Shown one piece after another: positions 666-53,723 of a stretch of DNA of 64,000 nt. The DNA comes from Podarcis pityusensis (Eukaryota). Position 1 is the stretch's first letter; each line of letters opens with the position of its first letter. Where the stretch lies: the NCBI GenBank assembly GCA_964106645.2, contig OZ067045.1. The stretch is one strand, 5' to 3'. The notes beneath the pieces are model-generated. The model did no database searches, was not told where the DNA came from, and worked only from the letters and a program-made list of their open reading frames with translations. The translations under genes and the position numbers were made by a program.

Positions 666-11451
<10,786 letters not shown>

Positions 11452-21346: not shown

Positions 21347-21425
21347 GTGATCCCGCCCGGAGACCCCCTTGAGGAGGAGGAGGCGACAGCAGCGGCCCAC
21401 CTTGCAGCTTCCCGAAGCGAGCGCC

Positions 21426-23411
21426 ATGAGAGCGGCTCAGGAACGGGGCCAGGAATTCCTCCCCCCCAAGAAGCGCGACCTGCCGGTGGCTGCCAACAAC
21501 GAAGAGCCGGGGCGGGCGGCTGAGTCGGGTCTGGTGGGCGGTGGCGGCAGCGAGACCTCTGTGGAATGGTCCCGGGGCTCAGCAACAGGCAGGCAGAGCC
21601 AGGCACCTTCACGTTACACGGAGGCTGGTGGCAGCTCCGACACAGTGACCAGTCTTACCGTGGACCAGTACGGCTTATTGTACAAAGTGGCGATGCCCCC
21701 GGCCACCTTCTCACCCGTGGTGAATGTCAGCCCGCTGCCTCCAGCCTTCAGTATGACCTCGCAGCTGATCCCGCACCCTGGTATCCCCTACTCGCCTATC
21801 CATTACACTCAACTTCCTCCTGCTCCCTTGCAGTTTGTGGGATCACACTACTCTGTACCCTATGCCGCCGCTGTGCCTCCTGGCTTCCTGCCCAGCCACC
21901 TTCTGTCCTCTTCAGCCAGCCTTGCTGCCTCTCATATCCCACACTTTGTGCCCTATGCACCTCTCCTGGCTGAAGACTCTGCTCCTTCTCCACAGGCAGC
22001 CCACAGCTTTGGCAAGACCAGTGCCTCAGTTTTGCCTTCAGGCTCTCTGCAGCCCCACGTTGGAGGTCAGCCACTGGATGTTACACAGGGCCGAATTCCA
22101 GTCTATTATCAGATGTCCCGTCTGCCAGCAGGCTATTCATCATTTGAAGCTTCTGTTGCTGGCCCAAACACTGAGCAGTCTCTGCAGGAGAATCAGCTAG
22201 ATCCTAAAGTCACAGCAAATGGGGTGCAAAGGTCTGCCGTAGGGGCAAAGGAAAGTGAGGCTGAAGGGCAGTGGCCAAGGACAACGGTAGAGTGCAGCAC
22301 TGAAGGTACCTTCTTGACAAGCAGTCAGATTTTGAGAACAGAGATCTCTGTGCCATCTCAGCGGAGCACCCCAGATACAGACCTGGAGGTGCAGAGGGTG
22401 GTTGGAGTGCTTGCTTCCCAGGACTACCCTGTTTGTTCTGCTCAGCAGAAGGATGGCTTGAGCCCTCTAAACCTTTCCCATCGTAATCCCCCTGAGCAGA
22501 AGGCAGAGTCAATGAGGAACCCAGTGGAACTTGTGATGGCTGCTACTGCTGAGAAAAGCCACTTTCGGAGACTGTCGCCAAAGTCCCCTGAGGAGCAGCT
22601 CTGCCATCGGCAAATACTGAAAGGCATTACAATGGCCAATGGTCGGCCAGTCTCAGGGTCCCTACATCCTGGGGCTCAGGATGGCCTGGGAGGTGCAAGT
22701 CCTGAGGGAACAGCCCATGAGGGACTACCTGACACGGAATGTGCCCATTCCCAGAGCCACTTACCCTCCCACTTCATGAAAGGAGCCATCATCCAGCTGG
22801 CCACAGGAGAGCTAAAGAGGGTGGAGGACCTGCAGACCCAGGACTTTGTGCGCAGTGCAGAGGTGAGTGGTGGCCTCAAGATTGACTCCAGCACTGTGGT
22901 GGACATCCAAGAGAGTCCCTGGCAGGGTTTCGTCACACTGCATTTTGTGGTGGGGGAGCAGCAGAGCAAAGTGAGCATCGATGTGCCCCCTGAGCACCCT
23001 TTCTTTGTGTATGGACAGGGCTGGTCCTCATGCAGTCCAGAGAGGACGAATCGGCTCTTCTCACTCTCCTGCCACAGGCTGCAGGTGGGAGATGTTTGCA
23101 TCTCCATCAGTTTACAGAGTCTGAATGGGAGGCTTGTGCCCCAGGCAAGCCCCCAGAGTGCTACCCGAGAGAGACCTGGGCGGGGTGGGGAGAGTCTCCA
23201 GGAGCTGCAGAAAAACCCATTGGAGAAGGGTGGGGTGGCAGTGGGCTCCCCCCAGGAATCCACCCACCATGATCCTGTTTCTCTGCATGGTTGGGCAGGC
23301 CCCAGCTTCCAAAGGTCTGGGGAGGAGCCCCGGCCACCACTCCTCCGCCCTTCATTCATTCCCCAGGAGGTCAAGTTGTCCATCGAGGGCCGTTCAAATG
23401 CAGGGAAGTGA
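21426..23411 (+). CDS. ATXN1L: Ataxin-1-like (661 aa, single coding exon), copy 1
   Basis: N-terminus MRAAQERGQEFLPPKKRDLP, STPDTDLEVQ motif, AXH domain (HLPSHFMKGAIIQLATGELKRVEDLQTQDF...), C-terminus RPSFIPQEVKLSIEGRSNAGK. True ATG is 21426; the ORF track starts at an upstream TTG. Confidence 0.97.
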   Translation: MRAAQERGQEFLPPKKRDLPVAANNEEPGRAAESGLVGGGGSETSVEWSRGSATGRQSQAPSRYTEAGGSSDTVTSLTVDQYGLLYKVAMPPATFSPVVNVSPLPPAFSMTSQLIPHPGIPYSPIHYTQLPPAPLQFVGSHYSVPYAAAVPPGFLPSHLLSSSASLAASHIPHFVPYAPLLAEDSAPSPQAAHSFGKTSASVLPSGSLQPHVGGQPLDVTQGRIPVYYQMSRLPAGYSSFEASVAGPNTEQSLQENQLDPKVTANGVQRSAVGAKESEAEGQWPRTTVECSTEGTFLTSSQILRTEISVPSQRSTPDTDLEVQRVVGVLASQDYPVCSAQQKDGLSPLNLSHRNPPEQKAESMRNPVELVMAATAEKSHFRRLSPKSPEEQLCHRQILKGITMANGRPVSGSLHPGAQDGLGGASPEGTAHEGLPDTECAHSQSHLPSHFMKGAIIQLATGELKRVEDLQTQDFVRSAEVSGGLKIDSSTVVDIQESPWQGFVTLHFVVGEQQSKVSIDVPPEHPFFVYGQGWSSCSPERTNRLFSLSCHRLQVGDVCISISLQSLNGRLVPQASPQSATRERPGRGGESLQELQKNPLEKGGVAVGSPQESTHHDPVSLHGWAGPSFQRSGEEPRPPLLRPSFIPQEVKLSIEGRSNAGK

Positions 23412-36700: not shown

Positions 36701-39016
36701 GGCTACCGGTGGGCACCTACCAGCCTTTCACCAACCTTCACCCACCTCAGATTCCAGCAACACCTCCAACATATGAGTCTGTAAGTACTGCTGATGAAAA
36801 ACAAAAGCTGAATTGCTGGGAGGGCAAGTCCTCTCTGCTGGGACTGTTGCTGTCCCTAGTCTAGTGCTGGGTATTGGCAGGCCTTCCCACTTGGACTGAC
36901 TGAGGAGTTGCCATCCACTGGATTTGAGCTTGCAGCAAACTTCATGCACCTTTGATATGATTTTGATTTATTGCATTTCTATGTTGGCTTTTCATTCATT
37001 CATTCTATGTTGCTTTTCATCTCAAAGCAGCTTACAAACAATAAATAGCCATAACATAATAAAACATACTAGCATGTCGCAAATACAGCATACATCATAT
37101 AAAATAATTAACAAATTATCAATAAAACATCAATAAAACAGTGGCAATCTATAAAAAACTTAAGAAAACAGCAACTAAAAAATAAGCTAAACCTCACAAT
37201 TACAGCAAGTCATGTGATTAACAAATCAATTCGGCATTTAGAATCTATAAAACAATATTAAAAACATTAACAAAATAGCAATTAAAAATATAAGCTAAGC
37301 ACTAAGTTCATTCACACAGTCTCTGTACCCCCATGACTCATAATCTTTCACTCTGTTCAGTTCATTATAATACACATAAATGCACATAATGCACTGGCTG
37401 GGGTCCTTGAGTAGTGGGCCATGGTGGAGATGATGGGGCTCTTAGGCCTACCGCCAGTGGTAAGGTGGATGTTGCCTGCCTAGGCATTGTTGAGGAGAAA
37501 CTTGCCCAGGTCACTTTCAATAATCAGGAGTCCCATTCCCACTTAAGGAAGTCCAAGACAAGCCTGTCCCTCTGGAGCAGTGAGTGGAAACTACACTTGG
37601 TATAGAGGCCAACCAGGAGGTCCAGCAGTGGCCCTGCAGCCTGTCCACCAGGAGCTGTTCCAGCTTCTTCAGCCGCACCTTGGTTGACGATGTGGTGGTG
37701 GAAGAGGCAGCCACTGAGGGGAGCGAGCAGAGCAGCTACTTGAGTCTACCACGCAGGAGGGAGGGGCTGAGATAATGATACCAAGAGAGCCCCAGCATGA
37801 TCTCAGCAGCCTGGATGAGCTTGCAGGCAGTGACTCAGAGGTCACCTTGGTTTCAGAGTCCAGGCTGCTGCCCATGGAAGGCATGAGCTGACGTTGGCTG
37901 GCAGGGGTGGAGGATGAGATGTGGGGTGGGTTGAGCAGCTACAGAGTGTGGAAATGGGGATGTGTCCACCTTCATGCCCTTGTGCTTGTTCAGCTGCTGC
38001 TCTCCAGACTTCTGTGGTTGCTGGTGGTTCATGTCAGGTTGAAGGTGAGACTGCCAGCGATGGTGAAGAGCTACAGGCCATCCTTGGGGGACATAGCCAG
38101 GGCCACTTTCTAGTCAGGTAGTCAGCCATGCTGAACGGCTCTCCCTCACCTATGGCACCACCAGGCCAGGCTCACCACCACTGCTTCCTCCTCCTCCAGA
38201 TCCCTCATTTCATCCTTCCTTCTGCTGTCTGGCAAGGCTGCATAAAGAAGATGGGAACATCAGATATGGTGCTTCTGCTGTGCATGTAGGCCTCTGGGGA
38301 GTTGTCAGGTGGTGGTTCTGTGTGGGGTGCTCCATGCAAAGCCAGCTTTTTTCTGTTTCAGATTGATGACATGGGTGCTGACAAGGAATTGCCACCCCCA
38401 CAGGTGACCGGTGAGTGCAGGGCCGGAGGGGAAGGCTGTGGAGCTGGCAAGGCAGTGAGGAGGGAGGGAGGTGGTGATGTCAGGGGAAAGCTGGTGCTTG
38501 TGTTTATTGTTGGTCCCCTTCACTCTTGTGTTCGCTCTTGAGTTGCTGAGGTAAGCATGTGCCCATGTGTGTCTGTGTTGGGGCAGAGACTGGGACTCTT
38601 CATGGCAGAGAGCTTGGGCCCCTTTAGCAACTGGTAGGAGCTGCAAGGCTCAACTGAAGTGCAGCAAGTGCTCACTTCTGCAGGACATATACTAACTGTA
38701 GTACAGCAAAAAGAAGAATGGTCCTACCCCTGCCCCTACTACTGTTGGGTAGACTACTGTTTTCGCTGCCTTGAGCCTGCCTACTGCTTGTAACCAGTCA
38801 CTCTTGTCTGCTGCAGGACCAGCCCCAAAGCCACAGCCGAGGGGGAGGCCACCAGCTGCAGTTCCTAGTTCGGGTGATAATTTTGTGCTGCCAGAGTTGC
38901 CATCTGTGCCAGACACGCTGCCTGCCGCTTCTGCTGGTGCCAACACTTCCGCCTCAGAAGACATTGACTTCGATGACCTCTCTCGAAGGTTTGAGGAACT
39001 GAAGAAGAAAACTTAA
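33794..39016 (+). CDS. IST1: IST1 factor associated with ESCRT-III (364 aa)
   Basis: Runs from MLGSGFKAERLRVNLRLVINRLKLLEKKK to DIDFDDLSRRFEELKKKT. Exons 33794-33881, 34861-35041, 35183-35270, 35540-35623, 36056-36166, 36255-36455, 36688-36780, 38362-38410, 38817-39016; total 1095 nt, in frame. Confidence 0.97.
34444..34728. mobile_element. pogo/Tigger-type non-autonomous DNA transposon
   Basis: TA-CCATATTTTTC...GAAAGATACGG-TA termini; CpG-rich, young-looking interior. Confidence 0.75.
37538..37691 (-). pseudogene. CDC42BPB: Captured CDC42BPB (MRCK-beta)-like exon 1 fragment; probable 5'UTR at 37692-37780
   Basis: Reads STKVRLKKLEQLLVD, then after a deletion/frameshift LLDLLVGLYTKCSFHSLLQRDRLVLDFLKW+G. 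MRCK-beta is MSAKVRLKKLEQLLLD...[29 protein letters not shown]+G. Confidence 0.87.
37781..37890 (-). pseudogene. CCNL2: Captured cyclin L (CCNL2-like) exon 1 3' fragment
   Basis: With one frameshift reads (T)PSMGSSLDSETK.DL*VTACKLIQAAEIMLGLSW, versus CCNL2 [35 protein letters not shown]. CGA>TGA and CGAG>CAAG are CpG-decay changes. Confidence 0.82.
37963..38038 (-). pseudogene. USP7: Captured USP7 exon 1 fragment
   Basis: cctgacATG, then MNHQQPQKSGEQQLNKHKGMKVD, versus USP7 [26 protein letters not shown]. Differences are mostly G>A transitions. Confidence 0.82.
38039..38129 (-). pseudogene. IMPDH1: Captured IMPDH1-like first coding exon fragment
   Basis: With frameshifts reads MADYLT..SGPGYVP(K)DGL*LFTIAGSLTFN, versus IMPDH1 [33 protein letters not shown]. 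Ends at AA of the Asn codon, the recalled exon end. Confidence 0.82.
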
Positions 39017-53523: not shown

Positions 53524-53723
53524 NNNNNNNNNNNNNNNNNNNNNNNNNNNNNNNNNNNNNNNNNNNNNNNNNNNNNNNNNNNNNNNNNNNNNNNNNNNNN
53601 NNNNNNNNNNNNNNNNNNNNNNNNNNNNNNNNNNNNNNNNNNNNNNNNNNNNNNNNNNNNNNNNNNNNNNNNNNNNNNNNNNNNNNNNNNNNNNNNNNNN
53701 NNNNNNNNNNNNNNNNNNNNNNN
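53524..53723. other. Assembly gap (200 N)
   Basis: Run of exactly 200 N. Confidence 1.

What the first reader, a model, noticed from the sequence alone, without database searches (positions are those of the whole stretch)
36960..38230. Retroelement built from a serial chain of trapped host first exons (IMPDH1, USP7, ?, CCNL2, CDC42BPB, ?) ending in an L2-type tail
Seen: the IST1 intron 36781-38361 holds, all on the minus strand and back to back, four decayed fragments of unrelated genes. They are IMPDH1-like (38129-38039), USP7 (38038-37963), cyclin L2 (37890-37781) and MRCK-beta/CDC42BPB (37780-37538), with two further coding-looking pieces, an AT-rich spacer and a LINE-like 3' end. Known: these are unlinked, broadly expressed genes, and each piece corresponds to the first coding exon. 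Primate SVA_F1 acquired MAST2 exon 1 once by splicing. Inference: a promoterless non-autonomous retroelement lands in sense orientation in intron 1 of a host gene. The host exon 1 splices into a cryptic acceptor near the element's 5' end, and the chimeric RNA is retrotransposed through its LINE tail. Repeating this adds a new exon at the 5' end each round, giving a chronological record of the promoters it parasitised (oldest nearest the tail). I am not aware of such an iterated exon-trapping element being described in squamates.
Basis: partly seen in the sequence, partly recalled or inferred. Interest (0 to 1): 0.97.

Follow-up and report, generated by a model that had tools for sequence, protein, structure and literature searches.

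The report
Lizard retroposon fossil capped with host first exons
An old, dead mobile element in an intron of a lacertid lizard's IST1 gene carries a head-to-tail chain of first-exon pieces from four unrelated host genes. This is the exon-capturing behaviour known from primate SVA elements, apparently repeated several times in a reptile.

Summary
On the minus strand of the IST1 intron (36782-38360) lie, back to back and in one orientation:
- an IMPDH-like start
- a USP7 start
- a cyclin-L piece
- an MRCK-beta (CDC42BPB) first exon
- an AT-rich repeat with a LINE/SINE-like tail

MRCK-beta (E 1.5e-4) and OTUD1 (E 4.7e-5) are statistically supported. USP7 is weak but specific. IMPDH and cyclin L rest on reading only.

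The host is a lacertid. The insert sits at the same site in Podarcis muralis, Lacerta agilis and Zootoca vivipara, but not in the amphisbaenian Rhineura. It evolves like neutral intron DNA and has lost its CpGs.

Contigs from three related species show nested copy numbers. The tail repeat is very abundant. About 10-20 contigs carry the MRCK-OTUD1 module and a few carry the cyclin-L module. The USP7 and IMPDH pieces are unique at 80% likeness or more.

Another note of this scan (s1-707737) reports a CDC42BPB-OTUD1 chimera elsewhere in this genome.

The best reading is serial capture of first exons by splicing. [quoted passage not shown] Source copies and parent exons could not be examined.

The parts
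38130..38235 (-). Unidentified 5' lead, possibly an IMPDH 5' UTR or a further captured exon. The 5' limit of the insert is uncertain.
   Evidence: No PDB or Pfam hit. Single copy at 80% likeness or more. Present in all four lacertids. No target-site duplication found.
38038..38129 (-). IMPDH-like first coding exon piece, decayed, with 3-4 frameshifts.
   Evidence: Reading. Lacerta and Zootoca keep DGLTVQ*LF. Not testable by phmmer. Single copy.
37964..38032 (-). USP7-like first coding exon piece, starting at the ATG, preceded by a 5-nt linker at 38033-38037.
   Evidence: The only PDB hit of the 25-aa ORF is USP7 residues 6-26, E 5.6. Single copy.
37891..37963 (-). Unidentified piece, probably the upstream part of the cyclin-L exon-1 fragment.
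   Evidence: Summed depth is about 4x, like the cyclin-L piece. No database hit.
37781..37890 (-). Cyclin-L (CCNL1/2)-like 3' part of exon 1.
   Evidence: Reading. There are 2-3 extra contigs in each of three species, and one variant copy has a 37-nt shorter middle (tables 3 and 5c). No solved structure to test against.
37690..37780 (-). Lead of the MRCK module, presumed to be the CDC42BPB 5' UTR but unverified.
   Evidence: Contiguous with the MRCK coding piece. Depth 1-1.6x.
37538..37689 (-). MRCK-beta (CDC42BPB) first coding exon.
   Evidence: PDB MRCK beta E 1.5e-4, with the alignment ending at ..FLEW. 7-12 variant contigs per species. Scan note s1-707737.
37405..37537 (-). OTUD1 OTU-domain fragment. 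It is internal coding sequence with a deletion of about 54 nt.
   Evidence: PDB 4bop OTUD1 E 4.7e-5. 9-18 variant contigs per species.
37046..37375 (-). AT-rich body of an abundant dispersed repeat, with an internal duplication of about 108 nt.
   Evidence: Summed contig depth is 100-200x baseline, with 500-750 contigs laid per DNA run over the whole stretch, mostly on this repeat. Internal repeats. GC 0.28.
36955..37045 (-). 3' tail of the same repeat: a short hairpin-forming motif, a TGAA run and an A-rich end.
   Evidence: Loose-end consensus of many contigs matches the tail (table 7). Tandem repeat. The fold is not significant, z -1.5. No tRNA or Rfam match.

Best explanation
This is the neutral fossil of a non-autonomous, LINE-dependent retroposon of lacertid lizards. 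Its 5' end was extended several times by host first exons.

Inferred order of events:
1. A copy of an abundant AT-rich repeat with a LINE-recognised tail picked up an OTUD1 coding fragment, by 5' transduction or a template switch.
2. That element, lying in sense in an early intron of CDC42BPB, was transcribed from the host promoter. Exon 1 was spliced onto a cryptic acceptor in it.
3. The chimeric RNA was retrotransposed through the tail. This gave a small subfamily of roughly 10-20 detectable copies.
4. Later rounds added cyclin-L, USP7 and IMPDH first exons in the same way. Each new exon cut away part of the previous one's 5' side.
5. The copy studied here landed antisense in an IST1 intron. 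That happened after lacertids split from amphisbaenians and before the Podarcis/Lacerta/Zootoca ancestor. It has decayed since.

Shown: module identities (in part), one orientation, the insertion and its age bracket, neutrality, and nested copy numbers. Inferred: splicing as the joining step, the order of captures, and the LINE partner.
For: - Module identities.
- All modules are on one strand, abut within 0-8 nt, and there are no inverted repeats.
- Similarity to MRCK beta stops at ..FLEW. Similarity to USP7 stops at residue 26, where by my memory of the alternative USP7 isoform exon 1 ends.
- Internal modules lack their 5' parts. USP7 starts at the ATG and cyclin L starts mid-exon. Their 3' ends are kept. 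This is expected for splice capture and opposite to template switching.
- Nested abundance has the same shape in three species. In run X2, against a baseline of 25, the tail repeat reaches 2300-5500, OTUD1 and the 3' MRCK part about 475-560, cyclin L 63-116, and USP7/IMPDH 25.
- Scan note s1-707737 reports a second CDC42BPB-OTUD1 chimera in the same genome.
- The insert is present in L002-L004 and not in L001.
- There is no tRNA head, so an outside promoter is needed.
- Precedent: SVA_F1 (MAST2 exon 1) and pt_SVA_D6 (STK40 exon 1, with exons of 8 other genes added in many members), PMC6139936. L1 chimeras with first exons that end at splice donors, bioRxiv 10.1101/2025.02.02.635956.
Against: - No second copy of the USP7 or IMPDH modules, and no intermediate form, was seen at 80% likeness or more. 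The model predicts at least source copies, though old copies may fall below 80%.
- The fall in depth toward the 5' end could also come from 5' truncation of one long master element.
- Contig depth is not a copy number.
- Parent genes of lacertids were not available. Exon-1 ends rest on memory, and IMPDH and cyclin L rest on reading.
- OTUD1 is not a first exon.
- The tail's LINE partner is unknown.
Confidence: 0.6

Rival explanations
1. The chain was made in one event. During a single retrotransposition the reverse transcriptase started on the tail repeat and switched templates several times onto unrelated mRNAs. No iterated history is involved.
For: The USP7 and IMPDH modules, and perhaps the cyclin-L module, are unique to this locus at 80% likeness or more. 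Other first-stage notes in this genome describe retrocopies fused to L2 3' ends as candidate template-switch chimeras (s1-711355; unchecked). The OTUD1-to-repeat junction is not at an exon end.
Against: A template switch should give modules with free 3' start points and complete 5' ends. Here at least the two testable 3' ends (MRCK, USP7) stop where exon 1 is remembered to end, the IMPDH and cyclin-L ends look the same by reading, and the 5' sides are cut. The MRCK-OTUD1 part exists as its own multi-copy subfamily, so at least that step was separate.
Confidence: 0.15
2. The first exons were joined to element RNA by trans-splicing, once or repeatedly. The element never lay inside the donor genes.
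For: For primate L1 chimeras with first exons, most donor loci hold no intronic L1, and trans-splicing was proposed. The junction pattern would look the same as for cis-splicing.
Against: No direct evidence here. The cis route has a documented source element in primates (RAP1GDS1/L1PA2). A chain of four still needs repeated joining.
Confidence: 0.15
3. The fragments were captured at DNA level (Pack-type or Helitron transposon, or replication template switching), or the resemblance is chance.
For: Other notes in this genome mention a Pack-type hAT element with a first-exon fragment and a FoSTeS-like fossil (unchecked).
Against: There are no terminal inverted repeats and no promoter or intron sequence between modules. 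All modules are in one orientation. The insert ends in a retroposon tail shared with hundreds of contigs. Two modules have E below 2e-4.
Confidence: 0.04

Closest known systems
Human SVA_F1 (MAST2 exon 1 spliced onto SVA)
   Same: [quoted passage not shown] The captured sequence ends at the exon's 3' end, and the form spread as a subfamily (PMC6139936).
   Different: The body here is an AT-rich lizard repeat with a non-poly(A) tail, not SINE-R/VNTR/Alu with an L1-type poly(A). The host is a reptile. The element is long dead. There are several stacked exons.
Chimpanzee pt_SVA_D6 (STK40 exon 1, with exons of 8 other genes added in many members)
   Same: Further host exons were added 5' of an already captured first exon, which is iteration of the capture.
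   Different: In the chimpanzee the variants are young and the subfamily tree is documented. Here a four-deep chain is seen in one old copy and the intermediates are not recovered.
Primate LINE-1 chimeras carrying first exons (cis- or trans-spliced)
   Same: First exons in sense orientation that end at splice donors, possibly supplying a promoter.
   Different: Those are autonomous L1s with target-site duplications and poly(A). Here the element is non-autonomous and no target-site duplication was found.
L1 template-switch chimeric retrocopies (U6/L1 type)
   Same: Several unrelated RNAs are joined head to tail in one retro-insertion.
   Different: In those chimeras the 5' partner is copied from its natural 3' end. 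Here the module ends fit exon-intron borders.

Membership tests
Exon-1-capped non-autonomous non-LTR retroposon (SVA_F1 / pt_SVA_D6 type, by mechanism) | Host first exon in sense orientation at the 5' end, with the captured sequence ending at the exon's donor site. | tested here: inconclusive
   Similarity ends at ..FLEW (MRCK) and at USP7 residue 26. Exon borders are from memory, because lacertid parent genes were not available.
Exon-1-capped non-autonomous non-LTR retroposon (SVA_F1 / pt_SVA_D6 type, by mechanism) | Several dispersed copies share the captured exon (a subfamily). | tested here: met
   The MRCK-OTUD1 part has 7-18 variant contigs in each of three species, plus scan note s1-707737. 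This is not met for the USP7 and IMPDH modules.
Exon-1-capped non-autonomous non-LTR retroposon (SVA_F1 / pt_SVA_D6 type, by mechanism) | The 3' part is a repeat mobilised by a LINE. | tested here: inconclusive
   The tail and AT-rich body are at 100-200x summed depth. No autonomous partner was identified.
SVA proper | Hexamer repeat, Alu-like, VNTR and SINE-R parts, with poly(A) and an L1-type target-site duplication. | tested here: not met
   None of these parts is present. No target-site duplication was found. The host is a lizard.
L2-clade LINE 3' tail | The tail is shared with an autonomous L2, with a stem-loop and short 3' repeats. | not testable with these tools
   No repeat library is available. 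No LINE with this tail lies in the window. The hairpin fold is not significant. A TGAA run is present.
tRNA-derived SINE | tRNA-like pol III head. | tested here: not met
   ARAGORN finds none and Rfam finds none.
Pack-type or Helitron DNA-level gene capture | Terminal inverted repeats or Helitron ends, with captured DNA that includes introns or promoters. | tested here: not met
   There are no inverted repeats and the modules abut without intervening sequence.

The most novel reading that the evidence does not exclude
A lacertid LINE-tail-dependent retroposon lineage lacks a promoter of its own. It repeatedly replaced its 5' end with CpG-island first exons of broadly expressed host genes: CDC42BPB, then cyclin L, USP7 and IMPDH. 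This left a four-step record in one fossil. It would be the first such exon-stacking element outside primates and outside the L1 system, and the third independent case that starts with a serine/threonine kinase first exon.
Probability: 0.45. Interest if true: 0.75.

Novelty: new variant of a known kind. Interest (0 to 1): 0.6.

Why it matters
It would show that promoter theft by splicing of first exons is a general solution for promoterless non-autonomous retroposons. It would not be a peculiarity of hominid SVA and L1. It can operate with a different LINE partner, in a reptile, tens of millions of years ago, and repeatedly in one lineage.

It also gives a datable insertion marker for Lacertidae. 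And it supplies a small family (MRCK-OTUD1-tail) whose subfamily tree can test the order of captures directly in public lacertid assemblies.

Tried and rejected
- Other copies in the window: blastn of the intron against the rest of the 64-kb window found none.
- Paralogous copies through predicted proteins: a word search with the 73-aa MRCK piece found no candidate.
- PDB searches: the IMPDH/USP7 86-aa frame gave only chance Myb hits. The cyclin-L pieces gave nothing or chance EgtC hits. The 5' lead gave nothing.
- Pfam on ten stop-free pieces gave nothing.
- Rfam and tRNA scans gave nothing relevant.
- Target-site duplication: only a 7-mer, compatible with chance.
- The tail hairpin fold is not better than shuffles.
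- Earlier-findings look-ups by sequence and by relatives were blank, which per the operators means nothing.
- The first IST1 family search returned mainly fish, and the Podarcis isoform X2 was not on record. I went through a bird query and the cluster members instead.
- Frame-corrected readings of the IMPDH and cyclin-L pieces have no reference, so I did not send them to any search.
- IST1 was searched with one exon by reference.
- Rejected readings: a tRNA SINE, DNA-level capture, and chance.

Full report
**Setting**

IST1 lies on the + strand. One exon ends at 36781 (..PPTYESV) and the next starts at about 38361 (IDDMGADKELPPPQVTG). The exons are almost identical to IST1 of Podarcis muralis and close to other lacertids, so the window comes from a lacertid lizard. 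I searched IST1 with a single exon by reference. I built no joined exon model.

**Observation**

A three-frame reading of the minus strand shows the following, 5' to 3':
- an unidentified lead (38235-38130)
- an IMPDH-like start (38129-38038): MADYL, GPGYVP, DGL, LF, G.LTFN, spread over three frames
- five bases of linker
- a USP7-like start (38032-37964): MNHQQPQKSGEQQL..GMKVD
- 73 unidentified bases (37963-37891)
- a cyclin-L-like piece (37890-37781): PSMGSSLDSET, then KLIQAAEIMLGL
- a 91-base lead and an MRCK-beta first coding exon (37780-37538)
- an OTU-domain fragment (37537-37405)
- an AT-rich stretch (GC 0.28), ending in a tail with a TGAA run and an A-rich end (36955-37045)

Against all PDB sequences:
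- The MRCK piece hits MRCK beta best (E 1.5e-4), and the alignment stops at ..FLEW.
- The fragment next to the tail hits OTUD1 (E 4.7e-5). The lead to OTUD1 came from scan note s1-707737 and I tested it here.
- The 25-aa USP7-like ORF has one hit only: full-length USP7, residues 6-26. At E 5.6 it is weak alone but specific to the N-terminus.
- IMPDH and cyclin L could not be tested. Their in-frame pieces are shorter than 20 aa, or no structure exists. They rest on my reading against remembered vertebrate N-termini.

The frame-corrected readings have no reference, so I did not send them to a search.

**It is an insertion, and an old one**

I fetched the IST1 loci of Rhineura floridana (L001), Lacerta agilis (L002), Zootoca vivipara (L003) and Podarcis muralis (L004).
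- The whole insert is present at the same site in the three lacertids, at 89-95% identity.
- The Rhineura intron is about 610 nt. It aligns only with the intron flanks, up to window 36915 on one side and from 38307 on the other.
- The four-way alignment restores 9 nt lost in the window and in Podarcis. IMPDH then reads DGLTVQ*LF against the expected DGLTAQQLF.
- The alignment also shows that the 16-nt duplication in the tail is derived.
- Most frameshifts are shared by all four species, so most decay predates their common ancestor.
- Per-segment identity in the insert (0.86-0.99) is no higher than in the flanking intron (0.94-0.98), and indels are frequent.
- CpG observed/expected is 0-0.33 in every module.

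The insert is therefore a neutral fossil.

**Family evidence**

The stretch is held by three related organisms. I laid contigs of three DNA runs and one possible RNA run at 80% likeness or more. In all three species, contigs bridge both insert/flank junctions.

Summed contig depth in run X2, against a baseline of 25:

| Region | Window range | Summed depth |
|---|---|---|
| AT-rich body and tail | 37002-37372 | 2300-5500 |
| OTUD1 piece | 37373-37478 | about 490-560 |
| 3' part of MRCK exon 1 | 37532-37584 | 475 |
| Falling within the MRCK exon | 37585-37743 | 244, 85, 39 |
| Cyclin-L piece and the unidentified piece before it | 37797-37955 | 63-116 |
| USP7 and IMPDH pieces, lead and flank | 37956-38350 (first bin 34) | 25 |

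- The shape is the same in the other two species.
- Counts of variant contigs agree: 48-70 in the repeat, 9-18 in OTUD1, 7-12 in the 3' part of MRCK, 2-3 in cyclin L, and 0-1 further 5'.
- One contig carries a cyclin-L module with a shorter middle, so it is another decayed copy and not the gene.
- One contig in each species joins the tail directly to the OTUD1 piece.
- Depth from contigs is not a copy number, and copies older than about 20% pairwise divergence are invisible.
- An independent first-stage note in the same genome describes 'CDC42BPB exon 1 fused directly to an OTUD1 catalytic-domain fragment' (s1-707737). That fits a second member of this subfamily. I did not see its sequence.
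- There is no other copy in the 64-kb window.

**Mechanism**

- All modules have one orientation and abut within 0-8 nt.
- There are no inverted repeats, no tRNA head and no Rfam match.
- The 3' ends of the two testable modules (MRCK, USP7) fall where similarity to the parent protein stops. For USP7 (residue 26) and MRCK (..W) this is where I remember exon 1 to end. The IMPDH and cyclin-L ends look the same by reading only.
- The 5' sides are cut. USP7 begins at its ATG without a UTR, and cyclin L begins inside the exon.
- This is the signature of a first exon spliced onto a cryptic acceptor in an intronic element. It is the reverse of what template switching gives, which is complete 5' ends and arbitrary 3' starts.
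- Damert used the same argument for STK40 exon 1 in chimpanzee pt_SVA_D6. Many of its 94 members carry further 5' additions, including exons of 8 other genes. That subfamily parallels MAST2 exon 1 in human SVA_F1 (PMC6139936).
- Primate L1s also acquire first exons that end at splice donors, in cis or possibly in trans (bioRxiv 10.1101/2025.02.02.635956).
- CDC42BPB is, like MAST2 and STK40, a serine/threonine kinase gene. This may be coincidence.
- The OTUD1 piece is internal coding sequence, and by memory the gene is single-exon. It needs another origin: 5' transduction from a repeat copy lying in or behind an OTUD1 copy, or a template switch.

**What is not shown**

Exon borders, the paralogue assignment (IMPDH1 or 2, CCNL1 or 2) and divergence from the parents are therefore untested.
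- No copy with USP7 or IMPDH modules other than this locus was seen. The last two steps could have been joined in one event. The decline in depth could also partly reflect 5' truncation.
- The tail's 'L2' label is unverified.
- The possible RNA run covers the whole intron evenly, which says nothing about expression of the element itself.

**Verdict**

It is a reptilian, non-L1 variant of a known process, not a new kind of element.

Noticed in passing
L003:4096-4349 (Zootoca vivipara), at the point that corresponds to window 37182: Zootoca alone has an extra element of about 275 nt nested in the AT-rich part. Its ends are inverted copies of each other (CAGTAGTCCCTCGACTTAC... / ...GTAAGTCGAGGGACCACTG). 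This looks like a MITE-type DNA transposon insertion.
   Followed up: partly
window 21351-23408 (+): An uninterrupted 686-aa ORF upstream of IST1 with an AXH-like stretch. By my reading it looks like ataxin-1-like (ATXN1L), the neighbour of IST1 in mammals, which would mean conserved synteny.
   Followed up: no
window 36961-37020 and the same place in L004, L002 and L003: The 16-nt duplication inside the tail is shared by the window and Podarcis muralis but absent in Lacerta and Zootoca. The 9-nt loss in the IMPDH piece has the same distribution. Both place the window's species nearer to Podarcis.
   Followed up: partly
window 37538-37560 and L003: Zootoca has a 17-nt tandem duplication exactly across the MRCK/OTUD1 junction.
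   Followed up: no
window 36790-38350, run X9: A small run guessed to be RNA holds contigs over the whole intron, including one 752-nt contig that runs through the abundant repeat. This fits IST1 pre-mRNA or an antisense transcript. Strand and origin are unknown.
   Followed up: no
window 53524-53723: A run of 200 N (assembly gap or masked stretch).
   Followed up: no
same genome, other pieces (scan notes s1-711355, s1-711389, s1-711318): Other first-stage notes report retrocopies fused to or nested in L2 3' ends, and a first-exon fragment inside a presumed hAT element. Together they hint that LINE-tail-mediated capture of host RNA is common in this genome. These notes are unchecked.
   Followed up: no
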